64,000 nt of DNA from Octopus sinensis (GCF_006345805.1 NC_043012.1:36704001-36768000); one strand, 5' to 3'; shown: positions 5,346 through 49,926, counted from the first letter of the stretch. Notes: generated by a model not told the origin, from the sequence alone. Made by a program: numbers and translations.

Positions 5346-5779
5346 TGATTTATATGGCGATATCTAGTTTTCATTGTCGAATCCCTATGAGCACAGTCCA
5401 TGGTGGACAGTGCACGTACTGGTGTAGGTGTTCAGGGAGCATTTAGATGCTCAACCACAAAGGATCATCAAGGAACACATCATTGCATTCAGAAGTAGAC
5501 TGGATTATGATAACCTGATAAGCTATGGGGAGCTCTATATATAACAGTAGCAGACATACATCTATTTGTACACACAGTCTTTTCACTGTGTGTTTGTGCA
5601 TGTGTGTGTTCAGAGTCTATGCAGAGCTACAGCAGCAGTAAACAGTGACGTAACCGTTTTACAGCTCAGCTACAAATGATGCCATCACTATTTACGAGGT
5701 GGGCTGCTGATGATGTAAACGTTAGTGGCTGTGGCTGCAAACAGGTGACATCTCTAATGGTATTTGTTTAATTTTCCAG

Positions 5780-6081
5780 GAAGAGAACAACTGTGAACTG
5801 TATCCCGGTGTTAACAATGTAGGTAATACCTACTCCCTAAACTCGTTCAATGGTAACGTCCAGGCAGAGAAACAAGCAGCAGAGAAAGACATTGTGGAAA
5901 CAGCGGCAGTGAACCCTATGGAGTTCAAGCTGAGGCAGTCGGAATTTATGGAAGCCCAGAAGCAACAGGCTGAATTTATTGAAGCCCAGAAGCAACAGGC
6001 TGAGTTTATGGAAGCTCAAAAGCAACAGGCTGAGTTTATGGAAGCCCAGAAGCAACAGGCTGAGAAATTAGCCGAGGAAAG
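5780..6081 (+). CDS. BTB/POZ-domain protein, internal exon A (EENNCELYPG...(EFMEAQKQQA)x4...LAEE)
   Basis: CTAAT branch point at 5754, TTTTCCAG acceptor, open frame over all 302 nt, AG|GTTAGT donor; the phase-2 end joins exon B in frame. Confidence 0.75.
5942..6061 (+). repeat. Coding 30-bp tandem repeat x4
   Basis: GA(A/G)TTTAT(G/T)GAAGC(C/T)CA(G/A)AAGCAACAGGCT repeated four times in frame. Confidence 0.95.
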
Positions 6082-6793
6082 GTTAGTAGTCTTGCTATTT
6101 AAGTGTGAGATTTGTTGTTAGTTCAATATTTGATCTAAATTTTGAAGAATTCTCAGTTTTATGCTAAGACTTAGGAAGACTCTTAAAAGGTTTTTCAGAG
6201 TTTTCCAAATATGGTTCATTGTTTTAGTGGTTTAGTTTTGATTTATTTTCTTGCATTTACTTCTCCTGTCACCAACCCTTAACTTACTCTTTGTCCAGAA
6301 AGGGTTTCCTTTTTTTTTTTTATTTTGGATTCAAAAAGAATTGAAATGTGTAGAGCTAGCAGATGATTTGCTGACAAAAAATATCAACAGATGTCACCTG
6401 TTGCAGCCACAGCCACTAACGTTTACATCATCAGCAGCCCACCTCGTAAATAGTGATGGCATCATTTGTAGCTGAGCTGTAAAACGGTTACGTCACTGTT
6501 TACTGCTGCTGTAGCTCTGCATAGACTCTGAACACACACATGCACAAACACACAGTGAAAAGACTGTGTGTACAAATAGATGTATGTCTGCTACTGTTAT
6601 ATATAGAGCTCCCCATAGCTTATCAGGTTATCATAATCCAGTCTACTTCTGACTGCAATAATGTGTTCCTTGATGATCCTTTGTGGTTGAGCATCTAAAT
6701 GCTCCCTGAACACCTACACCTGAGTTCCAAACAATGATAGTGGTGAAACATGTGTAGGAATTTTATTATAAACTTGAGTTTATCCTTATTCCT

Positions 6794-6874
<81 letters not shown>

Positions 6875-6924
6875 ACTAAGTGGAGCAAGATCACACATGA
6901 AAACGAAAGGTGTCGCTGAGAAAC

Positions 6925-7394
6925 ACAGAGAAAATAGGCGATGAGTGTACATGCATATTTCAGGAAGTATTGCTCTCTCATCAGTATCACATCCAACTGA
7001 TCAACAATTCACAAACACATTGCGTAAATATATCAGTGATGTAACACTAATATATATCTTGTTGTATTTTGGGATGGTCATTTTTTTTTTGGCCTAATAA
7101 ACACACGCACTATATATATGTGACGAAAGATTTTCGGACAATGGATATGAGTTAAAATAATAAAATAAGAACAGTAATAAACTATTGGAGGGAAAATATA
7201 TAGTGCGTGTGTTTATTAGGCCCCCCCCCAAAAAAAAATGACCATCCCAAAATACAACAAGATATATATTAGTGTTACACCACTGATATATTTAAGCAAT
7301 GTGTTTGTGAATTGTTGATCAGTTGGATGTGATACTGATGAGAGAGCAATACTTCCTGAAATATGCATGTACACTCATCGCCTATTTTCTCTGT
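6925..7394. repeat. Inverted repeat, about 195-bp arms (6925-7117 / 7196-7394), about 80-nt loop
   Basis: Reverse-complement match with a few substitutions and a homopolymer indel. Confidence 0.9.
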
Positions 7395-7949
7395 CTTTGA
7401 TTGCATTGTTTATACAGACATATCTGTGGCATGAAATGCAGTAAATGTCAGTGCTGGCTCTGAACTCTATAGAAAATCCGTAGAGGTAAACTTGTGTGTG
7501 TGTGTGTATATATATATATATTTATATATTTGTGTGTGTGTATGTTTTGAATGTGAAACAATGTGTATATGTTAATAATATACACGCTGTCTGACAGCTG
7601 ACAGAATGTTCATTGATAGATGTAAAAACACTGCAGTTGGTGACAGTTAAAAGAATGGAACAATTGAAATATGGTGTCAGTTTATTCGTCGGATTTGCTG
7701 TTGTTTTGTTTTAACCTGGTGTTGGCTGTCAGCTCTGGTCAGCCTGACCAAACATCACACACGATCCAACTGTGACCATTATTCAATGTGTCCTTTTGTT
7801 ATTCTTTTACTCGTTTCAGTTGTTGGGCTGTGGCCATGCTGTGGCACTGCCTTGAAGAGTTTATTCAAACGAATTAACTTCTAGTACTTATTTCTGTGTC
7901 TTCTACTTACTTGTGAAGGTGCATGGCTTCTACTGACAAGTGAAAGCAC

Positions 7950-8280
7950 ATGGCGCAGGTGGTTAGAGCATCGGGCTCACAATCATGAGGTTGTGAGTTC
8001 GATTCCTGGACTGGGATGTGTGTGTTGTGTTCTTGAGCAAGACACTTTATTTCAAGTTGCTCCAGTTCACTCAGCTGTAGAAATGATTTGCAACATCACT
8101 GGTGCATCGGCCCCTTTGCCTTTCCCTTGGATAACATCAGTGGTGTGGAGAGTGGGGTGCTGGTAGGCATGGGTGACTGCTGGTCTTCCATAAACAACCT
8201 TGCCTGGACTTGTATTTTGGATGGGAACTTTCTAGGAGCAATTCCCTGGTCATTCAAGACCAAAGGGAGTCTTTACTCTT
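7950..8280 (+). mobile_element. tRNA-derived SINE (family D here; second copy at 55919-56258)
   Basis: A box TGGCGCAGGTGG, B box GAGTTCGATTCC, core TTCTTGAGCAAGACACTTTATT; collinear with the copy at 55.9 kb. Confidence 0.8.
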
Positions 8281-8896
8281 TTTACTTGTTCCAATGATCT
8301 ATTTTGCTACACTGGTAGATTACGAGGATGTAAGCAAACCAACAGAGGTTGTCAAGTAGTGGTGGGAGACAAACACATGCACAGAAAGTGAGTGTAAGCA
8401 GAGTAAGAGAGAGAGTGAGTGAGTGAGAGAAAGAGTGAGAGAGAGAGTTTAAGGCTTAAAGATGACAATGTATATAAATGAACTCCTTTTTGACAGAAGT
8501 AATGCAATAATTTGGTTCCCAGACTAAAAGACAGGATCCTGAAATTCTACTTCAAGCACACTGCAAACGTTTATGGATTGTGAATGTTCCAAGTTGTTGT
8601 GAAAGGGGAGAAGAAAATTCCTTGTGGTGTTCGTTTTGGCCCTTTTCGTGTGAGATTATGACATTCTCCCTAAATCGGATGCCAGACCATTGCAGGGTTC
8701 AAAGCCAGAGATTTTGAGGGGAGGGTGTGATCTCAGTTACTTATAGGCTATGGAAACTGGGTAACTGTATGGGTCTGGGGACTCAAGAAAAAAAGGAATA
8801 TGCTTTGTAGAATGAAGCTGAGACGATGCAAGGTTGAACTCAGCACATAAAAAGGGCCAAAACGAACACCACAAGGAATTTTCTCCTCCACTTTAA

Positions 8897-9204
8897 CCCC
8901 TTACCCGGCAGAAACGAATATATGCGTTTTGACCGAAATCGTTTTTTTCTATCTCTGGCGAGTTAACTCGTCAAAAGATAGACTCGCCAAAATCGACAGC
9001 AAACGAGTTCCTTCGTCTAAAAACGGGTTAACTCGTTTCTGCCCAAAGCGGTAATTTAAAATCAATATTATTGAATTAAAATTCATAATAAATAAGGTTT
9101 GAAATATACCTCGAAATCACCATTCAAAACATAGTAAAATAAAACAATTAAAAAATATGTCTGAAAAAATACATTTATTTTCAAAATAATTGTTGGGTAA
9201 GGGG
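8897..9204. mobile_element. piggyBac-like MITE
   Basis: 10-bp TIR CCCCTTACCC/GGGTAAGGGG with TTAA duplicated at 8893-8896 and 9205-9208. Confidence 0.85.
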
Positions 9205-10189
9205 TTAACAACTTGGAACATTTGCAATCCCTAAACATTTGCAGTGTGCATGAAGTACAATTTCCGGGTACTTGATTGGTACTTTATTTTATTGACCCTG
9301 TGAGGATGAAAGGGAAAGTTAATTTTCAGGGGATTTAAACTTGGAATGTAAAGAGTTGGAAGAATGCTATTAAGGATATTGTCTGATGTGTTAACAATCT
9401 TGGCGTCTTTCCACCTTGTAGAACAGTGCTTCTCAGCCATGGTTCCCAGAAACACATGTGGCCCTCAAGCATCCTTCCAGTGGACCCCAACGGTCTTCCC
9501 TCTATAATATAATAAAGTCTTCTTTAATTGACTTGTGTTTTACACTTTTTGGTACAGCCCCTTAAAAGAATCGAGGTTTTTGATCTGGCCTGGATATTAA
9601 AATGGTTGAGAGTGTGCTGGGTGCATTTTTTTAAGTAGTACCACCACTAGCGAGGTCACCTTATGATTGACAGGAAGAACTGGAGAGGTGGGTAAGGTGT
9701 TGAGAGAAGATAAAGTAAAGGGGCAGGGGGAAAGAGATTTACTGTTGTGAGAGGGTGGTGGTGGTGGTGGTGGAGAGAGAGAGTAGCAAGAAGTGACAGT
9801 ACTGGAGAGGGGGGGAGTTATGGAAAGGAGAGGAGGAAAGAGAAAGGGTAGCAAGGGTTGAAAAACAGGGGCAGAGCAGTAAAGGTGATGAAGTGGGCTG
9901 AGTAGGAGGGAGGGCACTCATCCAGTGCCATTCCACATTGTATAGGTAGATGAATATGGATGGGTGGAGTAGATGGAGGGTTGCATGAGAGATGGAGAAG
10001 CTGTGGGGAGAGGCTCAATGAAAAAAAAGAAGAGGTGGTCTAGAGAGAGGAGAGGGTATTGAGGTGGTGGCAGTGTGAGAAGAGAAAACGAGGAGTAAGG
10101 GGGTGGATGAATGCAGTGTGAGACAGATGGAGTGTCCTTAGCCACCCTCATTACCCGTCTTAACATTCTCTCTTCCATGTTTACCCAAG

Positions 10190-10450
10190 ACTGGATGTTT
10201 CTCTCGTACAATTGTATGTCATCAATTGTCTCAGTTCCTTGTCATCTCTTTTACGAGGCTCAGCTTCTTGAGATTGGTTCTCATCATTTCACCTCACCTC
10301 CTCCTAGCGTCTCCCCTTCCAAAAGCACCATCTACTTCACGCATTCAGCACTTCTTATGCCACTGTTGTCATCCATATGCACCACACGTCCATACCAACG
10401 CCAGTCTCCTCTCTCGCCAGCCACACTGGATTCCTCTTTCTACACAGTTT
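10190..10450 (-). mobile_element. Old RTE LINE 3' fragment
   Basis: Minus strand reads as a frameshifted RERRL.WYGRVVHMDD...GRGR-like C-terminus, homologous to 45950-46200. Confidence 0.6.
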
Positions 10451-10569
10451 CCCTTCCAAGGCCTTTGAATGTGTTGTTGAAGGATACAAATATTTTGCAT
10501 CTGGCCTTTTATGCCTGCTTTTTTTTCTTTCTTTTTGTAAACATGTTTGTGTTTTGTTCTTTTTTGTAG

Positions 10570-10711
10570 GCAACAAAGACAGAACGAAAATAAAGTATAT
10601 AAATATATGGTTTTGAATCACGAGAAGAAAATTCTGGAAACTCTTCGAACGCTTTGGAAAGGAAACCAGTTCTGTGATGCAATGTTGCAAAATGAATGCG
10701 TGTCCATTCCA
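10570..10711 (+). CDS. BTB/POZ-domain protein, exon B (QQRQNENKVYKYMVLNHEKKILETLRTLWKGNQFCDAMLQNECVSIP)
   Basis: Long pyrimidine tract + TAG acceptor, CCA|GTAAGT donor; H..IL..L..LW...FCD is the canonical BTB N-terminus; in-frame ATG at 10607. Confidence 0.9.
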
Positions 10712-10748
10712 GTAAGTTTCAGCCATTGTTTATTGTAAGATAACCAGT

Positions 10749-11175
10749 CATCATCATCATTGTTTAATGTCTGTTTTCCATACTGGCATGGGTTGGACGG
10801 TTCGACTGGGGTCTGGGAAGCCAGGAGGCTGCACCAGGCACCAGTCTGATCTGGCAGTGTTTCTACCGTTGGATGCCCTTCCTAATGCCAACCACTCCGA
10901 GTGTGTAGTGGGTGCCACCAGCACAGGGGCCAGAGAGGGCTAGCATTGACCATGATCGGATTGTGCTTTTTATGTGCCACCAGCATGAGGATCACTGCGA
11001 TTTGATTTTGATGTACTTGACTCAATAGGTCTCCTCAAGCATGGCACGTCGCCCTACAGTCCAAGGTACTTTTGAGTGGGCTGGTTATGCGACACTGGTG
11101 TAGGTTACAGCTGTGAACTCACTTTATTTGCTGGGTCTTCTCAGTCACAGCATATCTCCAGAGGTCTCAGTGTCC
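10749..11175 (-). mobile_element. RTE LINE 3' end/UTR with (GAT)n tail
   Basis: Reverse complement matches 37500-38020, which joins the RTE C-terminus to the SINE-shared tail. Confidence 0.7.
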
Positions 11176-11885
11176 CAAATAAAGGGCCTTGTGCACACTG
11201 CAATGCAGTTGGCACTAGGAAGGGCATCCAGTCATAGAAATCATGCCAAAGCTGACACTGGAACTTGGTGCAACCCTGCAGCTCACTGTCTTCTGTCAAA
11301 CTGTCCAACTCATGTCAGTTTGGGAGATGGACAGGTAAATGATGAGGGTGAATCGATTGCTGCTCCAGTTGGGATTCTGATTGGGTTGGTGGCTACCTTT
11401 GGGTATTTTAATTTTGTCTGACTATTGTAGTGAAGAATAATTAACAGGGCCACTTAGAACTGCATTTCTTAATCTGTGGGAAATTTCAGGATTTCAAGGG
11501 GACATTTAGGAATTCTGGTGTGTGCAGGGAATTTTTTTTGGTTAGGAAATTCTTTGTAATCTTTTCTTTACTGTTTTTATTAGATTTAGTTTCCTTAATA
11601 ATGATTTAAGGATGTTAAATAATTTAAAATTAATATAAAACCTTTAATATAAAATCTGTTTTATATTGATTTATATACAAGATTATTAATTTTTTATGTT
11701 ATGTGATAAATTGTCTTGTATACAAGATTAATCTCTAAATAATAATAGTTGGTATAAAGGGGGAAAGAGAGAGTAAAAGAGCTAGGGAGAGAGACTTAGC
11801 ATAAGATGTGCAGGATGAGTGCACATACTAGGCTTGGTGGCAGGCAATGAATAAAAATCTGTTCCTCTCTTCTCTCCATGCATGT

Positions 11886-11919
<34 letters not shown>

Positions 11920-14681
11920 ACACACACAGACACACATACTGTGAGAGACAAAGAATCAGAGACAGAGGATGAGTAAATAACTGAATATTATCGTTTGAAA
12001 ATTAATATTCATTATCATTTTCTATAAGCACTCAGAAATTTGCTAAAAGTTAAATTACAATTATTGTATGTGTGTCACATTCCTTGATATTATCCAATTA
12101 CTGATGGCAAATGTATTCTTCAAAAGTTACCCATCATATGATGGGTAACACTAGTGTTAATATAAATTTGTTTATGCTTTGCAATAATGTTGTATAAGAC
12201 TACTTTGATATAAAGTCATCAATGTTATGCAACAGTGTTGTATGCAAGACTATTTTGATATAAAGTTTGTTAATGTTAGAAATAGATCCTGTTGGATACA
12301 AGACTCAAGCTTTGTGAGAGAAACTTTGTAGATGGAAACTGTATGGAAGCCCTTCTGACAGACTCTCCCTGTAATTCAAAAGGTCAGCTTTGTCACAGTT
12401 ATGCTGGTTTTTTTTTTCCATGAATTGTGTTTAGTATACACATGTCTGGAATACTCAGCCACTTAGATGCTAGTTCAGTAATGATCTGTTTACATACAAG
12501 AAATACTTCTACCTTACATTTGCGGGGCAGGTGAATTGTGGTGTGCAATACTACCCCCCCCCCCCCAAAAAAAACAAAGGTTACAAAACGCTGGCTGAGA
12601 AGTAAACTCTTACACAAACAATTTCCTCCGTGTCATAATTCTTTGTTTTTGTTGGTGTTTAGTGTAAGGTGAGCCATTTTTTAACAGAATTACGATGGAA
12701 AATGTTCCAAAATAACTTATTTACACCACAAATATATCCAATCCTAAAACAAAGTATTCAGACGAGAATAATTAATTCATTTAAGTTCAGAGAAGGAAAG
12801 CAACGTTGTCATATTTTTTGGACAAATTAATTCGATTGTTGAAAAAAACAAAACAAAAAAAAACACAAGAATTAAAAAAACTAATTTTGTAGTCCAAGGG
12901 AGGTAATTTTTTCTTTTGGAACGACCCACGAAAAGAAATGAAATGAGATTAGTGAGATACCCGTTCAGCTATGGCCTCAACGTTTGAAATTTGGGGAAAA
13001 GGGCCACTCAATTAAATTCGTACTTATTTTATAGATCCTGAAAATACGAAAGCTAACGTCGACCTGGGCGGAATTTGAACCGGGCATGTAAAGACAGACG
13101 AAATGCCACTGAATATCTTATTTTGTCTTTTGTGATAATGGTTCTGCTATAGACCAGGGAAATATCTCTAGGTAACAGTTTGAGGCGGTGGATTAACAGA
13201 ATCGGTAATCAACCAGATATAAAAGCCTTGAGTTATTTAGTTCTGGCCCTCTATGTCCCGAGTTCAAACCATGTTGGGGTCAACTTCATTTTCCATCCCT
13301 CCAGAGTGATAAAATGAAATCAAGTACGAAAGGGAATCAATTAATATTGGTCTGTCAGAGGCGTCTTTAAGAGATTCTGACTGAAGATCTCAAAGGAATC
13401 TTCATAATACTGCTTGTGCTTCAATGGTGGGTAGGGGTTCGAACACCAGTTGCTATTGTATTTTTGTAAGGGTTAGTGATCCCCACTCCCTACCCCACAG
13501 CTATTATTATTAGACAGGGAATAGTATCTGCACTAATAAATATCATCATCATCATCATAGATTAACGTCCACTTTTCCATGCTTTCATGGGTCCGGCAGA
13601 ACTTTGGATTTTTTACATCTGGGTGCTGTTCCTGTCTCCAACCCTCACCTGTTCCCAAGTAAAGTCATATTTTTCCTATGACCAGATATGTTTTTGCACA
13701 ATATTGGAAATGAATGACACCATATGATGATGATGCTCACTGACAACCAACATGTCATGTCCAGGCAACACTACACTAAAAAACATTTACATATGTATGT
13801 GCACACACTCATACATGCATATATATAAAGGTACTACACTACCTTGTTGCTTACTTTGGTTATGTCACCATCGTTTAAAGCCGACGTTAAACGATGATGA
13901 TATAACCAAAGTAAGCAACAAGGATATCCAAGGTAGTGTAGTACGGTCGTTTCATGCTACTTCATTTTATTAAACACTGTAAGTATTACATCAGTTTTAA
14001 AATGTCGAACAATCTTCAGCCACATATAGAATTTTTTAATTAAATGGACAATGTACATTTTTGATTTATATGGACAATACCATACCAAATTCTGGTGCCT
14101 TTAACTTAAGTACCATATTCATCTGAATCTAAATTTTGCTGAATTTATATATATATATATATATGAGAGAAAATGCAGATTATGAAGTTAATAAGAGTTT
14201 TTTATCAGCAACAAATTGAACATTATCCCTTAGGGCTGTTTCAATTATACACAGTGAATTAATTAAATATTAAGTTCGTATTTCTGAGCATAATATCTTC
14301 AGAGGGAAAAAATATGTCCTTAGATGTTTTATTTGTTTGTTCATGGTTTCATTATAGCAGACTACTATAAAGAATCCATGAAGAAACATATAAAACATCT
14401 ACGGATACATTTTTTCCCTCTGAAGATATTATGCTCAGAAATATGATTAATTGAAAACAATTTGAGTAAGTATTACATCTGACAGAATAACAAGAGTGCC
14501 AGAAGGTTAAAGACAAAATCCATTCCTACCTGCACCGAGTTGGTTATCGTTGACGACAATTTAGTCAGCTGGTAACGAAAAGTTGTCTCCCTTACATCCA
14601 GTTTTTTTCTACTCATTCTATTACTACCAGGGGCCCAGCATGTATAAAAATTCAATAGACAACATATTCTCAATATATATT

Positions 14682-14909
14682 TCTTTACTACCCACAAGGG
14701 GCTAAACATAGAGGGGATAAACAAGGACAGACAAACGGATTAAGTCGATTACATCGACCCCAGTGCGTAACTGGTACTTAATTTATTGACCCCAAAAGGA
14801 AGAAAGGCGAAGTTGAACTCGGCGGAATTTGAACTCAGAACGTAACAGCAGACGAAATACAGCTACGCATTTCGCCCGGCGTGCTAACGTTTCTGCCAGC
14901 TCGCCGCCT
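14682..14909 (-). mobile_element. Complete tRNA-derived SINE (family C) with 15-bp TSD
   Basis: Head GGCGGCGAGCTGGCAGAAACGTTAGCACG, B box GAGTTCAAATTCC; TSD TTCTCAATATATATT at 14667-14681 and 14910-14924. Confidence 0.9.
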
Positions 14910-15494
14910 TTCTCAATATATTATTTTCTCAATACATATTCTCAATATAATATAGTGTACATTTAAACACAAGAGAAACTGCCTTCAACAGGCAGCTTTA
15001 CATGCTAGAAGAAGCAGTCAAAACGACCGAAACCACATTTAAGAGCAATCTTCAAAAGGAATGAAAAATAAAAACTTCTACTTTATTTTATTCCGGTCAG
15101 ACCCTAGGTTTCTAAAATTTTTTTAGCAAATGAAATAATTTGCTTGGCGAATTTTTCATCAGTGGCCATGCCATAACACTTACATAATTAAGAGATGATT
15201 AACACGTGTCTCTTTGTTATACATGATAATTTTTCAATTGCTAAAAACATATACGTAAAATATATATAGGGTAGTGAGTTTTTTTTTTAGAAATTTCACT
15301 ACCAGTGGCCTAGCGTGTATAAAAAGTCAATAGACAACATATTCTCAATACAAAATAGTGTACATATAAACACAAGAGAAAACTTAAATGTGGTTTTGAT
15401 CGTTTTGACTGGTTCTTCTAGCATGTAAAAACTGCCTGTTGAAGGCAGTTTTCTTTTGTGTTTAAACGTACACTATTTTATATATATATATATA

Positions 15495-16486: not shown

Positions 16487-16510
16487 TATATATATAAAAT
16501 TGTGTGTGTG

Positions 16511-16624
16511 TATAAATGTTTTGAACACTTTGGAAAGAGAACCAGTTCTATGATGTAATGTTGCAAAATGACTTTGTCTCTATTCTGGTCAATTTTAGCT
16601 GTTGTTTATTGTAAAATAACCAGT
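16511..16624 (+). pseudogene. Decayed duplicate of BTB exon B 3' part plus intron start
   Basis: Aligns with 10598-10748 with an internal deletion of about 32 bp; donor degraded to GTCAAT; no acceptor. Confidence 0.85.
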
Positions 16625-17089
16625 GGCACACAAAATGCATCCAGTAAACCCTGTAATGTAGTTGGTGCTAGGAAGTCGTAGAAATCCTGCCAAAGCTGAC
16701 CCTTGAACTTTACATGCGACCCCCTGCAACTCACCGGATTCTGTCCAACCCATGCCAGTATGGGAGCTGGGCATTAAATGGGGATGAATCCTTGTGCAAG
16801 TGTGTGCTACTATAGTCCTGGGCCAGCCAAGGCTTATGCATGGACTGAATAGATGGAAACTGCAGGAAGACCATTGCATGTTTATATATAACCAACAGAG
16901 TGCCACAATGTATACAATAGCGACTGTTTAGCCATTTTCACAAAAGTTTACTTCTAAAGTTAGCAGTCTGCTACTATAGTCTTGGTAACACTAGTATATA
17001 TATATATATATTATACACCTAAACACATATTATCTCCCCTATTCTTTTAGTAATATGATTGTTTTTCCTTCATAATTTTCAATGTTATA

Positions 17090-18863: not shown

Positions 18864-19937
18864 GTGCATAAAATCCTCCTCATTGCGTGCTGTCCAAAAA
18901 TCTTAGACACGTACGACTACATTATGAAAGACACCAACGTCCAAGTGTGTTTCCCCCGCAAAGTATCTGCTGACGCTCTCAGAGCCTTTGTTGATTACCT
19001 TTATAACGGGTCATTAAACTTAAGTAAATCTATCCTCGACAGCATGGAGTACCTCTCAGGGATGCTGGGTTTGGATGATATTCGTCAACTGTGCAATCAA
19101 TTTCGATTAGACTTATTTAATGATTCCAATAATGTGCCTGACAAGACCATTGTAACTGTTAGCCACTCTCAGAATACTTCAGGGCTCCATCTTTCTTTGT
19201 CGAATCCCCCAGCCACACCACCGCCACCTATAATTCGCCTCTCATCACAAACGACTTTGTCTGCAATGTCCACGACCAATATACAGATGCCATCTTCTTC
19301 TCCACACTACCAAGATAATCGGAGAGTAAGCTACTCACAGAAATCTTCAGAAAACAGATTTAATATTTTACCAGAACATTCTACAGATTCTGAGGTTTTA
19401 AATGTGAACTCAATAAAGTTAGAACCAGAAGTTGATTTGACGGTTGATGATTGCACGGAGGTGAAGCAGGAAATCGCAACGTACCAAAACAGCGAAGATT
19501 GTCAATTTGGTTCTTGGTCACAGATCGATTCTCAGAGTGACGATTCGTTATCACATCGTAAAAAGAATGACTCTGTTAATTTTGACATCCAAACCACAGT
19601 TGATCTGAGTGTAACGCCTTTAAAATCTTTCACAAGTCATTCACAAAAGACTGCTAGCCATGATGACCCCGACTTGCAAAGTGTCATAACTATATCCCCT
19701 TCAAATTCTCCACTTCACTCCCCGACTTCTGTCGATTCTTCTCCTGATGTCCAGACTTTTGAAGTAGATTCAGAAACACCAAACCTAAAGACACATCTGA
19801 ACCCTTACCCTGTCGGCTTAGTTATGGCTAACACACACAATCTCACATTAACAGAAAATAATAGGAAAAAAAGAAGCACTTTTGAAGATTTTGATGTAGA
19901 TTTTGAGTGCAAAAAGTCTAAAATGGCACTTCAGTGA
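18864..19937 (+). CDS. BTB/POZ-domain protein, terminal coding exon C (VHKILLIACCPKIL...MALQ*)
   Basis: TTTCAG acceptor, phase 0 with exon B, giving FCDAML...VHKILLIACC...ALRAFVDYLYNG (BTB core); 357-codon open frame ending TGA TAA; AATAAA at about 19951. Confidence 0.9.
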   Translation: MHKILLIACCPKILDTYDYIMKDTNVQVCFPRKVSADALRAFVDYLYNGSLNLSKSILDSMEYLSGMLGLDDIRQLCNQFRLDLFNDSNNVPDKTIVTVSHSQNTSGLHLSLSNPPATPPPPIIRLSSQTTLSAMSTTNIQMPSSSPHYQDNRRVSYSQKSSENRFNILPEHSTDSEVLNVNSIKLEPEVDLTVDDCTEVKQEIATYQNSEDCQFGSWSQIDSQSDDSLSHRKKNDSVNFDIQTTVDLSVTPLKSFTSHSQKTASHDDPDLQSVITISPSNSPLHSPTSVDSSPDVQTFEVDSETPNLKTHLNPYPVGLVMANTHNLTLTENNRKKRSTFEDFDVDFECKKSKMALQ

Positions 19938-38033: not shown

Positions 38034-38064
<31 letters not shown>

Positions 38065-38489: not shown

Positions 38490-40480
38490 ATAATAATTAA
38501 TTCTGGTTTTATTGGCCACAAGGGCTAACATAAATCAAAAACATGTAAGGACAAACACAGGATGAAAAGTAGAAAGGGTTTTGCGAAAAAGAAACGTCCG
38601 TGTAAACATTAGAAAAACAGAAAAATATAACAAATAAAATTTCCAATAGGGGGAGGCACTTTGAAAGGTTACTCATGGAAAAACCCATAAAAGCCACTTG
38701 GTTGAGGGCAGTCAGAGCTTGACGGCACTCGAGGTGCCAAGCGCCCTTTCTTGGTCTGCGTATGATCAAAGTTTCAGCTCTGTCAAAGAGATGAGCTGCG
38801 GAAAGTTGCGTCTGATGAACAGTGACTACACCCGCTCACCGTCCCAGAAACGCTTGAGATGCCATAGTCTGAGTGCATGTCTGCGCATCAGCAGCCACAG
38901 CATGCCAAGGCCTCCGTTCAGTGGCTGTTGACAGCAGATGGAGCCCCTGACCACTGCTACCATGCCCTTCCACAGAAAGTCGAAGAGCAAGTGCACCAGC
39001 TTGGCCAACCAGCGGTCGGGACAAGGGGCGACGGTCAATTGGTAATAGATGACGGATGCGATGTACGCATTCGCCACCTCTGCTTGACCTTCCAGGGACA
39101 GCTTCCTCTCGGCCCATTTCTGGGTGAGATTGGCCACCCTGCTCATCACTTCGGCCCAGTTTTTCTCCACCAGGAGGTCCAGACTGAACCAGACTCCGAG
39201 CAGTTTAATGGGACCATCTGTCCAATGCCCTATGACGCTGTTGGATGGCATGAACTTGCCCCTCCAGGTGCCCAGTTGCAAGCCCACTGACTTTTCTGCA
39301 TTAATTTCCGTACCTGTTACCACTTCGTACTCGTTTAGCATCTCGCCCATCAGGTCGATGCGCCTGTGGCTCGACATTATCACGTTGACGTCGTTGGCAT
39401 AGGCAGACATGCTTTTTCCACATCCCAGATCATGCGGGACACCCCTCAAAGCCTCTAACTTCCACAGCAATGGCTCGAGAGTCATTACGTAGAGGTGGGA
39501 GGAGAGAGGGCATCCTTGGCGGAACGAATGTGAGATGTCGAAGGGCTTGGAAAGGTGACCGTTCACACGTATGACCAAGCAGATGCCACTGTACAAAGCA
39601 GTGATCCACCCGCTCAAGACCGGACTGAAACTGGCTGCCCAGAGAACAGCTGCCAGGTATCGATGGTCAACCCTATCGAAGGCTTTAGACTGATCTAAAT
39701 TGATCAAAGCCACACGCGCGCCAGCTTCGTTACCCACCCTCTCTATGATGTAGTGCATGAGATGGATAGACCTGGTGGGCATGGTGCATGTCTGCGTTTT
39801 GCCAGTCAGCTTGTCCATGACAGCACCAACCTCTTGGCTAGCACCTTGGCCAGAATCTTCAACTCTGCATTGAGCAGAGTGATGGGGCTAAAGTTCCCTA
39901 TCAAGACCCCTTGTTTGGGTCCTTTCTCAGCAATGCCACCACTCCTCGATAAACAAAAGCAAGAATTCTCACATTTTGTTGCCAGTTGCAGTAGACATTC
40001 GCCAAGAGACCTGCAAAGAAGTCTGGCATTGAAGTGTAAAGTTCGTAGGGCAGACCATCCAAACCCGGTGATCTACCTCTCGTGCAACTTTTCATCACTT
40101 CCTCTACTTCTCAGGCAGATATCAGTCTTTCGCAGCACTCTACCTCACTGGCTGAGAGTTGTGGCAGGCCGTCCAGGTACACACTGGAGTCTGACCCATT
40201 GTCCGTCCCGAACAGTCGAGCAAAGTGCTGCAGAAAGACCGCACACATCTGGCTTGTTTCGGAAACCTTGCACCCATTCTGGTCCACCAAAGACTGAATG
40301 GTTGGTTTGTTGCTGTGCTTTGCCTCTGTCACATGGGCCCATCGAGCAGCCTTAGTCCCCTCTCTGCTTACCGAACGTGCCTTAGCTCTGACAATGCAGC
40401 CTTCATGTTTGACATCAAAGTGTTGGTCGTTTAACAAGTGATCTTGTTTCCAAGGCAACCAAACCTGCTCACATTTATAC
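38490..40480 (-). mobile_element. L1/Tx1-clade LINE ORF2 (RT) fragment, frameshifted
   Basis: SPGLDGLPYELY, LDQSKAFDRVDHRYL, RQGCPLS, YANDV motifs in ORFs 40111-40458, 39901-40098 and 38826-39818; (ATT)n tail. Confidence 0.88.
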
Positions 40481-41275: not shown

Positions 41276-41588
41276 TTACAGGGCTTAGAAAAACTAAAGG
41301 ACCGCTGCAATAAGTGTGTGAATCCGAGAGGAGAATATGTTGAATAAAATCATAATTAACTGATCTGCCTGTATTCTATTTTATCCAAAACCAGGAACAT
41401 TTCACCTCTGCCTCAAATACATATGAGATCTGGTGTAGCTCCAGGCCTTTGCCAGCTCCTGTCAAACTGTCCAACCCATGCCAGCATGGAAAACAGACGT
41501 TGAAGGAAGGTGATGAGTAATATGTTGTTTATTCCCAATTTGTCAAATGTTATTCATTTCTTTTCGTTTTTTTTGCTTGTTTCATGTT

Positions 41589-44577
41589 TGTTATAATCCT
41601 TAAAATGTTGGATTGTTATAATGTCCACTTTGGTATTAAGTATATTTAGCAAAACCAGTAAAGACACAACTGTCTCGGTCTGCCTACTACATACTCCGGT
41701 ACTTCATGTACTTCCCCTTACTTATAGTGACCAAGTTATTCCATTCGTCATGTGGGAGGGGTGTACCATTATTACTAATTCCCTACATATCCCCTTTTAA
41801 GTTTTTCTTACAAAATGTCATTTTATTCAGCAATAATTTTTTTTTATTCACCCCCACCTCCCTTTTTTGAGCCTCTTTTTTTTGTACAATTTAATATGTT
41901 TTGCACTTGGCACCTATTTTCAGGAACTCTGTGTTTTCTTTTCCTTTCACTTGTACACCTGGGTTCAATCCCCTGCAGTGGCATTGGTACTTGGAATGCA
42001 TCGTACAACCATTCCATCAATTCCTCCAACTTCTTTGGTTTGCTTTCCATGAATCTCTTGGTTCCTGTGTCTCTTTTTTATGTCCTTTTCTGCTTTTTAC
42101 CCAATACATCATTTTTACCTATGTATTTAGTAATTACACCATCTCCCCAACTCTGCTTTCCATTCTTGCATGCCCTCAAATATGCCTTTTCACCAACTTA
42201 AAGCATCTTGCTGTCTTCCCTGGCACTTTTTCTTTTCTTGCCAGGTAGCAATTAATCAAAGACTGATTTTACTTTCCTTTCAAACATCAGCTCCGCTGGT
42301 GATCTACCTGCTGGTGCATTCGGATTTGGTGTCACAGGGTACACTCTTAAAAATTGTTGAGGAGCTACCTCATTCGTGACTTCCTTATTCCATTTTCTAA
42401 GGGCTCTTTTGAAGGTGTTGGCAAAGTGTTCTGCCAGTGCATTAGATCTGGGGTGATATGGCGCCATAGTTATATGTTCTACCATGAATGTTTCACAAAT
42501 TTTTTTTATTCACTAGACACAAATTGCATTCCATTGTTGGACACTATCAGTTGAGGAAGTTAGTTTTTTTAGTTACAAATTTCTAGCCATTTCAAGAAGC
42601 TATCAACCACTACTAAGTCGTAAAAACCATTTAAAGGACCAGTGGAATCGATGTGTAGTCTCGACCACAGAACATCTACTTTTGAACAATGTTTACTTTT
42701 TATCATACTCTTTTACTGGTTTCAGTCATTTGACTGCGGCCATGCTGGAGCACCGCCTTTAGTCGAGCAAGTTGACCCCGGGACTTATTCTTTGTAAGCC
42801 CAGTACTTATTTTATCCGTCTCTTTTGCCGAACTGCTAAGTGACGGGGACGTACACACACCAGCATCGGTTGTCAAGCAATGCTAGGGGGACAAACACAG
42901 ACACACAAACACACACATATATATATATACATATATATGATGTGCTTCTTTCAGTTTCCGTCTACCAAATCCACTCACAAGGCATTGGTCGGCCCGGGGC
43001 TATAGCAGAAGACACTTGCCCAAAATGCCACGCAGTGGGACTGAACCCGGAACCATGTGGTTGGTTAGCAAGCTACTTACCACACAGCCACTCCTGCACT
43101 CATGTGCAATTTCTCATTTTGTCTTGGCTTTCATACAGGTGTTCCACTCAGACCCTCAGTTGCATTCGAACCTTTGACTGAACCAACTATATTTCCACAT
43201 AAAACACTTATGGGCATATTCCATACCTTGAATAGTTCCATCCATTCTGTGCTGAATAAATTAAGTGAACTTTTTTACACATATATCTTTGCCTCTTTTG
43301 TTTGACCTTGAAATGTTACATTACATATGAATTAACCGAGAAAATATAATCTTTTTCCTGTAACATTATGTGCAACCTTTTTTGATTTAAATAATTTCGG
43401 GTTACCAACATATTCCCAAGTTTTTTCGTTTATAATGGTGATATCACTACCTGTGTCCAATTGTATTTTAACACTTGAATTTCTGATTTTCACCTTCATG
43501 AATTTCCTCATCATTACATTACTAATTTCTTCCGATGACATACTATTTATTCTTTTTCCTTTGTTCTGACGTTTTGTGCATTGTCCTATATATGTCCAGC
43601 TTTGCGAGAATTCTCGTTCTAACTTCTGCATCCTTTTCGGCAGTTAGTCCCTCTCTAAATCAGGTATTTGAACATATCTGGCATTAATTCATCCAGCTTG
43701 AACTTCTTGCATTCCCTGTGATGTAGTCCTCGTTGTTTTTCTCTATGTTCAGACACTTCTACCCCCGCCAAGGACAATTACCCGAGGACAACAGATGATG
43801 ATTTAAAACTTCTTGATATATTGAAGATGGAGTAATTAACCAAGTGGGGTAATTGTCCTGGGGGTAGTTGTTGTCAGGGGGAATTGTCCTATGGAAGGGG
43901 GTGGTGTGGTAATCGCCCTGATATGCTTTCAATACATCTCAACACTTCTAAAGCAAACTTTGCTTGCTTACTTTCTTTGTAATTGGAATTTATAATTATT
44001 GTATCGTTCATGTTCTGCTGCCACCAGTTTTCTCAAGATTAAGCGTGTTTTCATCTCGTTTCCTCATATTTTCTGCAGTTTGCTTCGAAGGTAACTCCTT
44101 TGTCTGGTTCATATTTGGACTCTGTTATCGAATTTGCAACAGAGTCTGGTGAGAACACGTTTTTCTGACTTTCCTGATGATTTCAGAAATTGCAGCATTT
44201 GTTGTTGTTGGTGTTGTTGTTACTTCAGCTGTTGTTCTTGTAGTTGTAGCTGCTGCTGTTGCTGTTCTTTCAGTTGCTGTTGTTGTTTTTACAACTCGAG
44301 AAAATCGGCCAACAAATTTTCCATAATTCTCATAAAATTCTCACAACAGAAACTTTTGTGAGTTTGTTAACTCTTCACGAGTTGTTTAAATCCTTAAAAT
44401 GTTGGATTGTTATAATGGTCGCTTCGGTATACAGTATACTCAGCCAAACCAGTCACCATTGTCTCTGTCCACCCACTGCATATTCCGGTACTTCACATGG
44501 TTCTATTTACTTATTGTGACCAGGTTATTCCATTCATCACGTGGGAGGGGGTCTACTATTGTTACTAATTCCATACA
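41589..44577 (-). mobile_element. Ty3/Gypsy LTR retrotransposon relic lacking RT/RNase H
   Basis: Diverged direct repeats 41589-41787 and 44383-44577 (TG...CA), PPT AAAAGGGGATA next to the 3' LTR, gag-like VFSPDSVANSITE..YEP, protease LDTGSD (43332-43631), integrase RLHID..GP and PYHPRSNALAE (42252-42700). Confidence 0.85.
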
Positions 44578-45133
44578 ACTATATTTTGATGACACATAAA
44601 GTTATTATTCCATTATTAATGACACAAACCATGTACAGTATACTTCAGAGCGATTAGTTGAGTAAAGGGCGAAACGCCGAAAGTGAAGGATAAGAAAAAA
44701 AGCGGTCATAACGAAAACTGAATTGTAACGATAAGTGGGAACTCAATGTACAATTCACATATTGTTGTGATCAAGTGGTGTCAATATCTGGTTAAGATGT
44801 GTTTATAAACGAGAGGACTGAGAATGGTTGAAATTGTGTTGGTTACAAAGATCACGCACTACAGTTGGAACTAGGAACATGCTATTGTAGGGCACGGAAC
44901 CCAAGGTTTACGCATCCATAAAATAGAGTGAAAGATCAGTTAGAGTAAGGAATTGACTTGTGATATGGGAATGTTTTAGGAATGCAATGATTGCAAGAGG
45001 TTTTCGGTTCTGAGTTGTTATTTAGCGTCCGCTTTCCATGCTGTGCTTCCTGGCCTTACCAGCTCCTGTTCGAACCTCAGGTTCCGTGCCCTACAATAGC
45101 ATGTTCCTAGTTCCAACTGTAGCGAGGAGTACA

Positions 45134-46200
45134 TGGAGTACAGTGAAGAATTCCGGGTAGAGGTAGGGGTCCACCAAGGTTCAGCCCTCAGCCCCCTCCT
45201 ATTTATCGTAGTCCTCCAGGCAATAACGGAGGAATTCAAGACAGGTTGCCCATGGGAGTTCCTCTATGCTGACGACCTTGCTCTAATTGCTGAGTCACTA
45301 TCAGAACTGGAGGAGAAGTTTCAAACATGGAAGGAGGGATTAGAATCGAGGGACCTTAGAGTCAACCTAGCTAAAACCAAAGTACTAATAAGTAGGAAGG
45401 TAGACAAACCACAAATGTCTTCAGGAAGATGGCCTTGCTCGATCTGTAGAAAAGGTGTAGGTAGAAACTCTATATGATGTACCCAGTGTAAGCTATGGAC
45501 ACATAAGAGGTGCAGCAATATCAAAGGAAGGCTAACTGGGAAGATAGTTTTTGTATGTGGCAGATGCTCAGGAGCAATAAACTCTGAAAATCTGCAGAAA
45601 ACAACTTCCGTCACTTTCCAGGGGAAAAAACTAGAAGTAGTTGATAGCTACCATTATCTAGGTGACCAAGTCAGTAGTGGGGGTGGGTGCGCTGAAAGTG
45701 TAACTGCTAGAGTAAAAATAGCCTGGGTAAAGTTCAGGGAGCTCTTACCTCTGCTTGTGACTAAAGGCAGACTGTATGATGCATGTGTACGAACAGCCAT
45801 GTTACATGGCAGTGAAACATGGGCCGTGACTGCTGAGGACATGCGTAAGCTCGCGAGGAATGAAGCCAGTATGCTCCGATGGATGTGTAATGTCAGTGTG
45901 CATACTTGACAGAGCGTTAGTACCCTGAGAGAAATGTTGGACCTAAGAAGCATCAGTTGTGGTGTGCAAGAGAGACGATTGTGCTGGTATGGTCATGTGG
46001 CGAGAATGGATGAAGATAGGTGTGTGAAAAAGTGCCAATCCCTAGCAGTTGAGGGAACCCGTGGAAGAGGTAGACCCAGGAAAACCTGGGACGAGGTGGT
46101 GAAGCACGACCTTCAAACTTTAGGCCTCACTGAGGAAATGACCAGCGACCGAGACCTTTGGAAATATGCTGTGTGTGAGAAGACCAGGCAGGACAAGTGA
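45134..46200 (+). mobile_element. RTE LINE, 5'-truncated (RT to C-terminus)
   Basis: GVHQGSALSPLLF, FLYADDL, WYGHVARM...RGRGRPRKTW; stops and frameshifts. Confidence 0.92.
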
Positions 46201-48203: not shown

Positions 48204-48236
<33 letters not shown>

Positions 48237-48388
48237 TTGTTGAAATGGAAAGATGAATTTTCTTGTTACGGATTATTCAAAAGTTTAACCGATACCTGGG
48301 TAGCAAAAATCACAGCAGAAAAAAGCACGGTTGGAGATAAGACCATTTGGTGTTGCAACCGTGCGTTGGTGCGGATAATTGAAGTTTA

Positions 48389-49038
48389 ATATAATTAGTG
48401 AATGGAAGAAATGGAGTTGAACGAAGATTGTACAGAATTCCTTTTATTACATTCTACACATGTTTCAAAGGCCACAATTTTCCGAACACACAAACACAGA
48501 ATTTTTTCAGCCACCTGACAGGTTTTTTCAGCAGTGCTCATTATCTAGTGCCCCTCGCCAACATACGGCCGCGCACACATAGGCTAGTATACACATACAT
48601 GCTTTTAGGTAGGTTTTGTCTCGCCCCTAAAATACACCCTGTTTTCTTAAAATATTCAGAACATTAGTTTTGGTCACACAGAACATCTCCACACCCCTTG
48701 TTCCCATTAATTCCTCACCTACTAGATTTGACCGCGGCCTGACCTGTAATTATTCCAACGGACCTTTTGTCGGCCCCCACCAACCCCCTGATTTCAACGT
48801 ACATTGATAAACAGTTTAACCATGGGCTCTTAAGGAGCGTCCTCGCTCGAATTGCTTTGCTGCGCCTCTGTTTTGTTTTGTTCTGTCAACGTAATTCCTG
48901 CTTTTTCCTGAAGAGAAAGCTGCAATATGGTATCCTTATTTAATCAGAATTTGGAAAATTGTGGCCTTTGAAACATGTGTAGAATGTAATAAAAGGAATT
49001 CTGTACAATCTTCGTTCAACTCCATTTCTTCCATTCAC

Positions 49039-49047
<9 letters not shown>
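48389..49047. repeat. Perfect 95-bp inverted repeat (48389-48483 / 48953-49047)
   Basis: Base-by-base reverse complement with no mismatch found. Confidence 0.95.
48719..48907 (-). other. Putative exon of a minus-strand transcript (UTR or first coding exon)
   Basis: Acceptor CTTTCTCTTCAG|, donor AG|GTGAGG; all three frames have stops, but an internal ATG (MYVEIRGLVGADKRSVGIITGQAAVKSS) is open to the donor; CpG-richer than its flanks. Confidence 0.45.
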
Positions 49048-49082
<35 letters not shown>

Positions 49083-49438
49083 TATGTATGTATACAAAAC
49101 AACAACTGTGTGTATACAGTTCAACAGCTCTGTACATACAAACCATCAGCTGTGGATATAGAGAGTGTCCATAAATTATCTTTATACTTTGAAAAATTCA
49201 GCAGAAAATGAAAATTAAAGATAACTCAGCAAAGTTTACAAGAAAACATAGGCAAACAAATAGTTTTATTAGAAACCTGAGAATGCTTCCTCATGGGCTC
49301 CATTGGTTGCAAAGAAGTTGATCGAAGGATCTCAACATTAAATTCATACAATAAATTGTGGGAGATGTAAAGACAATTTAGGAACATCCTGCAGAGCAGA
49401 ACAGTTCATATATATACAGTGCAAGAACTGTGGACATA

Positions 49439-49926
49439 CAAATGTCTCAATTGTGCTCTGTTAGAACAGCCATGAAGTCATTTATTCAAACTGTTTGTCT
49501 CTCCCTCTCTCTCAACATATATAGTTCAAAAGCTGTGTATACACCCTACGGGTTGTGAATATATATTCCTGTTGTCAGAGAATATATAGATATACATACA
49601 TAATAGTTTCTTTATCAGTAGCCACTTACACACACACACACAGAGAAATCCTGTCTGTATCATTTGTCTTGAAAGAAAGAGGAGAATATGATGTTGTGAA
49701 ATTTATGCAGTTCCAAAGAATAACAACTGCGTAAGAGGGGTGAAATGGCTTCAGCTTGTAATCAACACCACATTCTTGGATTCCATTCTTTGCTAGGCTG
49801 CTCTTCCAACATTGGACCAACAGTCAGTTCTAGAAGAACGAAGAGATGCTCTGTGTGTGTGTGAGAGAGACGTGTTTGAATAAATGACTTCATGGCTGTT
49901 CTAACAGAGCACAATTGAGACATTTG
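49439..49926. repeat. Perfect 53-bp inverted repeat (49439-49491 / 49874-49926)
   Basis: Exact reverse complement, extended imperfectly by (CT)/(GA) tracts. Confidence 0.93.
49630..49829 (-). other. Putative non-coding exon of a minus-strand transcript
   Basis: Acceptor CTCTTCGTTCTTCTAG|, consensus donor |GTAAGT; stops in all three frames from the acceptor. Confidence 0.5.

What the first reader, a model, noticed from the sequence alone, without database searches (positions are those of the whole stretch)
5421..49926. Recurrent architecture: internal exons looped out by near-perfect unique-sequence inverted repeats that stop just before the branch-point zone
Three predicted exons share the same geometry. 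Exon 5780-6081 (+) lies between 333-bp arms; exon 48719-48907 (-) between perfect 95-bp arms; exon 49630-49829 (-) between perfect 53-bp arms. In each case the upstream arm ends 26-45 nt before the 3' splice site and the downstream arm starts about 140-310 nt after the donor. The arms match none of the SINE/LINE families seen elsewhere in the window, so they look like local inverted duplications rather than chance pairs of TE copies. The repeats are seen in the sequence. It is established that flanking reverse-complementary sequences promote exon skipping and back-splicing, and that coleoid cephalopods edit dsRNA heavily with ADAR. A purpose-built exon-looping system is inference.
Basis: partly seen in the sequence, partly recalled or inferred. 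Interest (0 to 1): 0.78.

Follow-up and report, generated by a model that had tools for sequence, protein, structure and literature searches.

The report
Local inverted duplications; one brackets an exon
The three inverted repeats are real, but they belong to at least twelve such local inverted duplications scattered through this cephalopod-like window, and only one brackets a proven exon, so this is a candidate circular-RNA or exon-skipping site rather than a purpose-built exon-looping system.

Summary
All three inverted repeats (IRs) exist at the stated coordinates:
- 5421-5752 / 6388-6720: 333 nt, 2 substitutions and 1 indel.
- 48389-48486 / 48950-49047: 98 nt, 1 mismatch, 95 nt perfect.
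- 49439-49491 / 49874-49926: 53 nt, perfect.

Exon 5780-6081 (+) is a genuine internal coding exon of a BTB-domain gene. It is homologous to a Sepia pharaonis protein and splices in frame to exons 10570-10711 and 18864-19937. The two minus-strand "exons" have stop codons in every frame and no homology. Splice-like AG...GT segments of that quality occur by chance in 25-34% of spacers of that size.

The IRs are not exon-specific. The window holds at least 12 local, high-identity (86-100%) IRs, none overlapping the window's interspersed repeat families and none with a consistent target-site duplication. That compares with 3 in 146 kb of other cephalopod loci. Exon B has no flanking repeat pair of its own. 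The orthologous exon in two decapodiform cephalopods has no flanking IR.

Best reading: a general process of local inverted duplication, probably template switching or fold-back repair, with one product happening to bracket an exon. That pair should form a 333-bp RNA stem, which favours back-splicing or skipping and ADAR editing. This effect is predicted, not shown.

The parts
5421..5752 (.). IR-B left (upstream) arm, 332 nt, in the intron 5' of exon A
   Evidence: pairs with 6388-6720 with 2 substitutions and one 1-nt indel. No other copy in the window.
5753..5757 (+). CTAAT, a branch-point-like motif directly after the arm; its second A (5756) lies 23 nt before the AG of the acceptor
   Evidence: Read from the sequence. 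A consensus match only, not a tested branch point.
5780..6081 (+). Exon A, a genuine internal coding exon (302 nt) of a BTB-domain gene. It contains four 30-nt tandem units encoding EAQKQQAEF(M/I).
   Evidence: Open frame. tblastn to Sepia pharaonis P0002 aa 265-344. In-frame splicing to exons B and C. Canonical ttttccag|G and AG|gttagt sites.
6388..6720 (.). IR-B right (downstream) arm, 333 nt, starting 306 nt after the exon A donor
   Evidence: In the RNA fold of 5411-6730 the two arms pair along their whole length, MFE -801 kcal/mol.
10570..10711 (+). Exon B of the BTB gene (142 nt); no flanking IR pair of its own
   Evidence: tblastn 82% identity to P0002 aa 346-394; splice model; no flanking pair.
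18864..19937 (+). Exon C, the last coding exon of the BTB gene (BTB/POZ domain plus tail, ends in a stop)
   Evidence: (PF00651).
48389..48486 (.). IR-J left arm, 98 nt
   Evidence: one mismatch (48484) against 48950-49047.
48950..49047 (.). IR-J right arm, 98 nt, abutting a (TA)n run at 49048
48719..48907 (-). Claimed exon inside IR-J: an AG...GT-bounded segment with no coding support
   Evidence: Stops in all frames; only short ORFs and no Pfam match; chance rate.
49439..49491 (.). IR-K left arm, 53 nt, perfect
49874..49926 (.). IR-K right arm, 53 nt, perfect
   Evidence: RNA fold z = -13.5.
49630..49829 (-). Claimed exon inside IR-K: no coding support. Its 'donor' lies at the end of a (GT)n run that pairs with an inverted (CA)n run next to the other arm.
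4366..4645 (.). IR-A: hairpin-type IR, arms of about 130 nt, 11-nt loop, 87% identity, in the intron upstream of exon A
6921..7398 (.). IR-C: arms of about 190 nt, 95% identity, 92-nt spacer, 200 nt downstream of IR-B in the same intron; no exon inside
8538..9267 (.). IR-D: older IR (88-91%) with a 115-nt left arm; its right arm is split by a ~310-nt insertion
13842..13923 (.). IR-E: 82-nt palindrome, 92%
14269..14451 (.). IR-F: hairpin-type IR, 90-nt arms, 86-89%
14945..15483 (.). IR-G: ~100-nt arms, 91%, 339-nt spacer, in a locally rearranged patch that also holds short direct repeats
44859..45122 (.). IR-I: 50-nt arms, 96%, 164-nt spacer, next to a LINE reverse-transcriptase fragment
55055..55428 (.). 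IR-L: 106-nt arms, 94%, 162-nt spacer. Its arms have ~73% matches in two Sepia loci, so this one is probably transposon-derived.

Best explanation
The three repeats are real. They are ordinary members of a larger set of at least 12 local inverted duplications in this window, with arms of 40-333 nt, spacers of 3-635 nt and identities of 86-100%. They lie outside the window's interspersed repeat families and lack target-site duplications.

Origin (inferred): a mutational process that copies a nearby stretch in reverse complement. The most likely candidates are replication template switching or fold-back priming during break repair. New copies then decay by substitution.

What is shown: one product, IR-B, brackets a genuine 302-nt internal coding exon of a BTB-domain gene.

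Expected consequence in the pre-mRNA (predicted from the fold, not observed): the 333-nt arms form an almost perfect duplex that places the acceptor and donor of exon A at the base of one stem. From established work on intronic complementary sequences, this favours back-splicing of exon A into a 302-nt circle or skipping of exon A. It also makes the arms a strong ADAR substrate. Skipping exon A alone shifts the frame, so the effect is more likely a cost or a down-tuning of the mRNA than a designed isoform switch.

Why the arm stops just before the branch-point zone: duplications that damaged splice signals would have been removed by selection.

IR-J and IR-K are the same kind of duplication in non-coding, transposon-rich sequence. 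The exons inside them are not supported.
For: - Repeats verified.
- Exon A verified by homology and reading-frame continuity.
- The window has 12 local IRs against 3 local direct repeats; 146.5 kb of other cephalopod loci has 3 local IRs (binomial P = 1e-4, sign test P = 0.035).
- No IR overlaps the interspersed-repeat families that cover 24% of the window (P = 0.04).
- No copies of any arm elsewhere in the window. No consistent target-site duplication.
- Arm differences are a mix of substitutions and small indels, with identity spanning 86-100%, so the events differ in age and are not all recent.
- 9 of 12 IRs enclose nothing exon-like.
- Exon B lacks its own IR. The orthologous exon in two decapodiform loci lacks one.
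- The arms pair fully in the RNA fold.
- Template switching is a documented source of new perfect inverted repeats (PMC5453318, PMC8794818, PMC10710096).
- Octopus circRNAs are low overall, and editing is concentrated in intronic and 3'UTR hairpins (PMC9699675).
Against: - The chance that a short-spacer IR encloses a real exon is small: 0.03-0.07 expected against 1 observed. Its upstream arm ends only 27 nt from the acceptor, so selection on IR-B cannot be excluded.
- With criteria matched to the observed sites, all three IRs with spacers of 382-635 nt have an acceptor-like site 15-50 nt from the arm end (6-7% each by chance). Those criteria were set after the fact.
- Eight of the 12 IRs lie within the BTB gene span (P = 0.002, region chosen post hoc), which a purely uniform mutational process does not predict.
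- The origin mechanism is inferred. No ancestral allele without an arm was available, because no octopod relative could be reached.
- A 64-kb window cannot show that the arms are single-copy genome-wide. IR-L has distant matches in Sepia.
Confidence: 0.65

Rival explanations
1. Selected exon-looping system. Unique inverted repeats are kept by selection around particular internal exons, ending just before the branch point, to drive regulated skipping or circularisation, possibly tuned by ADAR.
For: - IR-B brackets a real exon with near-perfect 333-nt arms that stop 27 nt before the acceptor.
- Enclosure of an exon is expected only 0.03-0.07 times by chance.
- IRs are concentrated within the gene span.
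- Acceptor-like sites sit 42-44 nt from the arm ends in IR-J and IR-K.
Against: - Two of the three exons have no support.
- 9 of 12 IRs enclose nothing exon-like.
- Exon B has no IR of its own.
- The arrangement is absent at the orthologous exon in two other cephalopods.
- Skipping exon A shifts the frame.
- Near-identity of the arms is what a young neutral duplication looks like.
- Octopus back-splicing is reported as low (PMC9699675).
Confidence: 0.05
2. Unrecognised low-copy foldback or MITE-type DNA transposons. Each IR with its spacer would be a small non-autonomous element with long terminal inverted repeats. IR-B would then be two opposed insertions of one element.
For: - Total sizes of 82-660 nt for most IRs fit MITEs.
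- The arms of IR-L have ~73% matches in two Sepia loci.
- IR-K is flanked by ATA/ATA.
- A 64-kb sample cannot reveal families with modest copy number.
Against: - No consistent target-site duplication at 11 of 12 IRs.
- No second copy of any arm or spacer in the window, although 24% of it is family repeats.
- No shared terminal motif among the IRs.
- IR-B cannot be one element, because its centre is a conserved coding exon. Its arms also lack individual duplications or tails.
Confidence: 0.15
3. Assembly artefact. The inverted copies were created by chimeric or palindromic long reads or by gap filling, and do not exist in the animal.
For: The youngest pairs are 99-100% identical. IR density is about 9 times that of other cephalopod loci. 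No reads are available to check.
Against: - Identities form a continuum down to 86%, with substitutions in every IR except the perfect K, which polishing artefacts would not give.
- Each extra arm is bounded by unique sequence on both sides, so it needs two switches, unlike missed-adapter palindromes.
- The spacers are 92-635 nt of unique sequence, one of them an intact exon.
- The window has no N gaps.
Confidence: 0.08

Closest known systems
Intronic reverse-complementary sequences that drive exon circularisation (inverted Alu pairs in human genes; minimal 30-40-nt repeats at ZKSCAN1 and Drosophila laccase2; Ivanov et al. 2015, cited in PMC9699675). Partly from my own knowledge.
   Same: Two complementary arms lie in the introns on either side of a single internal exon, within about 30-310 nt of its splice sites. 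They are far longer than the minimum needed, and no competing partner exists within either intron.
   Different: The arms are locus-specific sequence rather than two copies of a dispersed repeat. No RNA evidence of back-splicing is available here.
Mouse Sry, whose single exon lies between long near-identical unique inverted repeats and yields a circular transcript (my own knowledge: Capel 1993, Dubin 1995)
   Same: A non-TE, near-perfect local inverted duplication brackets an exon, which is the closest structural precedent.
   Different: The Sry arms are tens of kilobases long, and circularisation is demonstrated. Here the arms are 333 nt and nothing has been shown at the RNA level.
Template-switch mutations and fold-back inverted duplications (PMC5453318, PMC8794818, PMC10710096, PMC3907307)
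   Same: A reverse-complement copy of nearby sequence appears, with no target-site duplication. Inverted copies outnumber direct local copies, and perfect hairpins arise in one step.
   Different: Described short-range events are mostly tens of nucleotides, whereas these arms reach 190-333 nt. No ancestral state is available to confirm the switch points.
MITEs and foldback transposons
   Same: Small size and long terminal inverted repeats; IR-L has distant relatives in Sepia.
   Different: No target-site duplications, no shared termini and no extra copies in the window. IR-B contains a host exon.
Long intronic dsRNA hairpins edited by ADAR, including those reported for octopus introns and 3'UTRs (PMC9699675, PMC9989829)
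   Same: Long, near-perfect intramolecular duplexes inside a transcribed gene. At least 7 hairpin-forming IRs lie in the introns flanking exons A and B.
   Different: Editing could not be tested here. In most animals the usual source of such duplexes is paired transposon copies rather than unique local duplications.

Membership tests
Exon-flanking intronic complementary pair (circRNA / exon-skipping type) | The arms lie in the two introns flanking a bona fide spliced internal exon | tested here: met
   Applies to IR-B only. Exon 5780-6081 is homologous to Sepia P0002 aa 265-344 and splices in frame to exons B and C.
Exon-flanking intronic complementary pair (circRNA / exon-skipping type) | The same feature, for IR-J and IR-K (exons 48719-48907 and 49630-49829, minus strand) | tested here: not met
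   Stops in all frames, no ORF over 64 aa, no Pfam match. Splice-like segments of this quality occur in 25-34% of random spacers. Non-coding exons cannot be excluded without RNA data.
Exon-flanking intronic complementary pair (circRNA / exon-skipping type) | Complementarity of at least 30-40 nt close to the splice sites, and stronger across the exon than within either intron | tested here: met
   333 nt at 99%, lying 27 nt and 306 nt from the splice sites. No other partner for either arm. The arms pair fully in the minimum-free-energy fold.
Exon-flanking intronic complementary pair (circRNA / exon-skipping type) | Back-splice or exon-skipping junctions observed in RNA | not testable with these tools
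   No transcriptome data for this organism could be reached.
MITE / foldback DNA transposon | Target-site duplication flanking the terminal inverted repeats | tested here: not met
   Only IR-K has a 3-nt ATA match, with a 1-in-64 chance; the other 11 have none.
MITE / foldback DNA transposon | Multiple dispersed copies in the genome | tested here: inconclusive
   No extra copy in the 64-kb window or in two exact-match metagenome scans, but the whole genome was not available. The arms of IR-L match two Sepia loci at ~73%.
Template-switch / fold-back local inverted duplication | A reverse-complement copy of nearby locus-specific sequence, without a target-site duplication; inverted local copies outnumber direct ones | tested here: met
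   (12 inverted against 3 direct).
Template-switch / fold-back local inverted duplication | An ancestral or sister allele lacking one arm, with switch points at microhomology | not testable with these tools
   No genome from the same lineage was found. Decapodiform introns do not align.
Assembly artefact (palindromic or chimeric reads) | One arm absent from the raw long reads | not testable with these tools
   Indirect evidence argues against it: an identity continuum of 86-100% with substitutions, and unique sequence on both sides of each arm.
ADAR-edited long dsRNA | A long, near-perfect intramolecular duplex in a transcribed region, with clustered A-to-G differences between RNA and DNA | tested here: inconclusive
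   The duplex is predicted, and IR-B lies in introns of a gene with an intact ORF. Editing could not be tested.

The most novel reading that the evidence does not exclude
This lineage has an unusually active, non-transposon process of local inverted duplication. It seeds introns with long, near-perfect hairpins at about one per 5 kb here, roughly nine times the rate in other cephalopod loci. These hairpins would be a major home-grown source of ADAR substrates, and occasionally of exon-bracketing pairs such as IR-B that create new circular RNAs or down-tune genes. On this reading IR-B is a young natural analogue of the Sry arrangement, caught soon after birth.
Probability: 0.3. Interest if true: 0.6.

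Novelty: new member of a known kind. Interest (0 to 1): 0.35.

Why it matters
If IR-B does loop out exon A, it would be a clean, non-transposon case of a newly born intronic duplex acting on a conserved coding exon. That would be useful for asking how circular RNAs and exon skipping arise, and whether they cost the host.

The broader observation may matter more. Near-perfect local inverted duplications are dense in this window. If that holds genome-wide, it would point to a specific mutational process and would help explain where the many intronic ADAR substrates of cephalopods come from.

As it stands, the finding does not reveal a new regulatory system.

Tried and rejected
- Protein search with exon A alone found nothing. 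The exon was identified only through the Sepia BTB protein found with exon C.
- No protein from the same lineage exists in the databases. The best matches are 51-69% identical, so arm conservation and compensatory change could not be tested.
- The decapodiform orthologous loci L001 and L002 have no IR around the orthologous exon. Their introns do not align to the window.
- Rfam found no family in the window.
- Two exact-match scans of metagenome contigs, using arm sequence from IR-B and IR-K, found nothing. This is uninformative.
- I tested whether IR boundaries sit at (TA)n or other microsatellites. Only IR-G and IR-J abut one, which is not clearly above chance, so the idea was dropped.
- SINE or LINE origin of the arms is rejected within the window. 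Canonical MITE origin is rejected for lack of target-site duplications, except that IR-L looks transposon-related.
Individual ORFs were scanned instead.
- A first BLAST census missed self-overlapping palindromes; this was corrected.
Full report
**Observation**

All three inverted repeats (IRs) are present at the stated coordinates.
- IR-B: 5421-5740/6401-6720 is 320 nt ungapped at 99%. Allowing one 1-nt indel, it runs 5421-5752/6388-6720, 333 nt with two substitutions.
- IR-J: 48389-48486/48950-49047 is 98 nt with one mismatch at 48484, so 95 nt are perfect.
- IR-K: 49439-49491/49874-49926 is a perfect 53 nt.

The stated arm-to-splice-site distances are correct: 27, 42 and 44 nt upstream, and 306, 232 and 138 nt downstream. 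The window has no N gaps.

**The exons**

Exon 5780-6081 (+) is real.
- It is open in one frame.
- A search with the downstream 357-aa ORF found a BTB-domain protein of Acanthosepion (Sepia) pharaonis, P0002 (BTB domain PF00651 confirmed).
- tblastn of P0002 maps three consecutive exons on the + strand: aa 265-344 to 5810-6079, aa 346-394 to 10568-10714 (82% identity), and aa 394 onward to 18864-19391.
- Joining 5780-6081, 10570-10711 and 18864-19937 at canonical AG/GT sites gives one uninterrupted ORF ending in a stop.

Exon A is 302 nt, so skipping it alone shifts the frame. Exons A and B together are 444 nt, so skipping both keeps the frame.

The two minus-strand exons have stop codons in all three frames, no ORF above 64 aa and no Pfam match. 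Their splice-like motifs are decent. Using criteria matched to their strength, 25-34% of random 382-463-nt segments of this window contain an acceptor-donor pair on one strand or the other. If the acceptor must also lie 15-50 nt from the segment's end, the figure is 6-7%. The donor of the IR-K exon is simply the end of a (GT)n run that pairs with an inverted (CA)n run.

**The wider picture**

The three IRs are not special. A census by the repeat finder and by self-BLAST on the minus strand found at least 12 local IRs of non-simple sequence:

| IR | Coordinates |
|---|---|
| A | 4366-4645 |
| B | 5421-6720 |
| C | 6921-7398 |
| D | 8538-9267 |
| E | 13842-13923 |
| F | 14269-14451 |
| G | 14945-15483 |
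| I | 44859-45122 |
| J | 48389-49047 |
| K | 49439-49926 |
| L | 55055-55428 |
| H (long-range pair) | 26707-26914 / 32480-32687 |

Their properties:
- Arms are 39-333 nt, spacers 3-635 nt (H: 5565 nt) and identities 86-100%.
- Arm differences are a mix of substitutions and small indels.
- No arm has another copy in the window.
- None overlaps the interspersed families that cover 24% of the window (P = 0.04).
- None has a consistent target-site duplication or a shared terminal motif.
- Under one set of criteria the window has 12 local inverted repeats against 3 local direct repeats. Four other cephalopod loci, 146.5 kb from Sepia pharaonis and an ENA decapodiform assembly, have 3 inverted in total (P = 1e-4 and 0.035).
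- Nine of the 12 enclose nothing exon-like.

**Tests of the exon-looping idea**

- Exon B has no flanking IR of its own. The only other pairs across exons are diverged inverted SINE-type copies spanning exons A and B together.
- The orthologous exon A in Sepia (L002 67993-68310) and in the ENA contig (L001 4190-4453) has no flanking IR.
- Under uniform placement, the expected number of short-spacer IRs that fully enclose exon A or B is 0.03-0.07, against one observed. IR-B is therefore mildly surprising, but a single event cannot establish enrichment.
- Eight of the 12 IRs lie within the BTB gene span (P = 0.002). The region was chosen post hoc, and this clustering is unexplained.
- Published octopus data report overall low circRNA expression and no departure from other invertebrates in back-splicing. 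They also report that most A-to-I editing falls in introns and 3'UTRs, where hairpins are frequent (PMC9699675).

**Mechanism**

Shown:
- The arms of IR-B pair along their full length in the predicted RNA fold of 5411-6730, at -801 kcal/mol.
- IR-K folds with z = -13.5.

Established elsewhere: complementary intronic sequences across an exon promote back-splicing and skipping, and long duplexes are ADAR substrates.

Inferred:
- IR-B makes exon A prone to circularisation or skipping, and its arms prone to hyper-editing.
- The CTAAT branch-point-like motif at 5753-5757 sits directly after the end of the stem. This may hinder as much as help splicing of this exon.
- The IRs arise by reverse-complement copying of nearby sequence, through template switching at replication forks or fold-back priming in break repair (PMC5453318, PMC8794818, PMC10710096, PMC3907307). 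This fits the lack of target-site duplications, the excess of inverted over direct copies and the age spectrum. No ancestral allele could be examined.
- The arm stops short of the splice signals because copies that damaged them would not have survived.

**Rivals**

- Selected looping system: about 0.05, for the reasons given above.
- Low-copy foldback or MITE elements: about 0.15. The window is too small to exclude modest copy numbers, and the arms of IR-L match two Sepia loci at about 73%. Against this, target-site duplications are absent, and IR-B contains a host exon.
- Assembly artefact: about 0.08. The identity continuum with substitutions, and the unique sequence on both sides of every arm, argue against it. 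Only reads can settle the question.

**Limits**

- The organism is cephalopod-like, judged from its best protein matches.
- No genome of the same lineage could be reached.
- Conservation, compensatory change, genome-wide copy number and all RNA-level claims therefore remain untested.

**Verdict**

The sequence observation is correct, and one exon-bracketing pair is a good candidate for an RNA-level effect. The "recurrent architecture" and the "purpose-built system" are not supported. The more interesting lead is the high density of locus-specific local inverted duplications in this window.

Noticed in passing
window 4366-15483: Eight of the twelve local inverted repeats cluster within the BTB gene span (P = 0.002, region chosen post hoc). 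The pre-mRNA would carry at least seven long hairpins.
   Followed up: partly
window 16528-16605 (+): A degenerate copy of part of exon B (LWKENQFYDVMLQNDFVSILVN, 50% identity to Sepia aa 374-403) sits in the intron between exons B and C. It looks like an old local duplication or pseudo-exon.
   Followed up: no
window 5936-6064 (+): Exon A contains four tandem 30-nt units encoding EAQKQQAEF(M/I). The Sepia orthologue has a looser version of the same coiled-coil-like repeat.
   Followed up: partly
window 5207-5348 vs 10748-10915 and 17087-17271: Diverged (74-85%) inverted copies of the window's commonest interspersed repeat flank exons A and B together. Skipping both exons (444 nt) would keep the reading frame.
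   Followed up: partly
window 26707-26914 / 32480-32687: A 208-nt inverted pair at 99% identity, 5.5 kb apart. The right arm abuts a LINE reverse-transcriptase tail fragment (32726-33052, minus strand), so this pair may be two young copies of a LINE 3' end.
   Followed up: no
window 55055-55428; L004 825-911; L002 36760-36822: The arms of IR-L have ~73% matches in two Sepia pharaonis loci. This suggests an old transposon family shared across cephalopods.
   Followed up: partly
window 30099-30172 (-) and 30661-31339: A tRNA-Thr(AGT)-like gene or SINE head lies next to a tandem array of roughly 66-nt units (88-94% between copies).
   Followed up: no
window 38826-39818 (-), 45133-45477 (+), 59095-60902 (+), 43332-43631 (-): Fragments of non-LTR reverse transcriptases (Pfam RVT_1), plus an ORF with a retroviral-type aspartic protease motif (DTGSD). 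The region from 20 to 64 kb is transposon-rich, and no host coding exon was recognised there.
   Followed up: partly
window 8538-9267: IR-D has a 115-nt left arm, but its right arm is split by an insertion of about 310 nt. This shows that older IRs are being broken up by later events.
   Followed up: no
L002 (Sepia pharaonis gene model for P0002): The N-terminal 210 aa of the annotated Sepia protein come from exons 50-60 kb upstream and look unrelated to the BTB part. The model may be chimeric.
   Followed up: no
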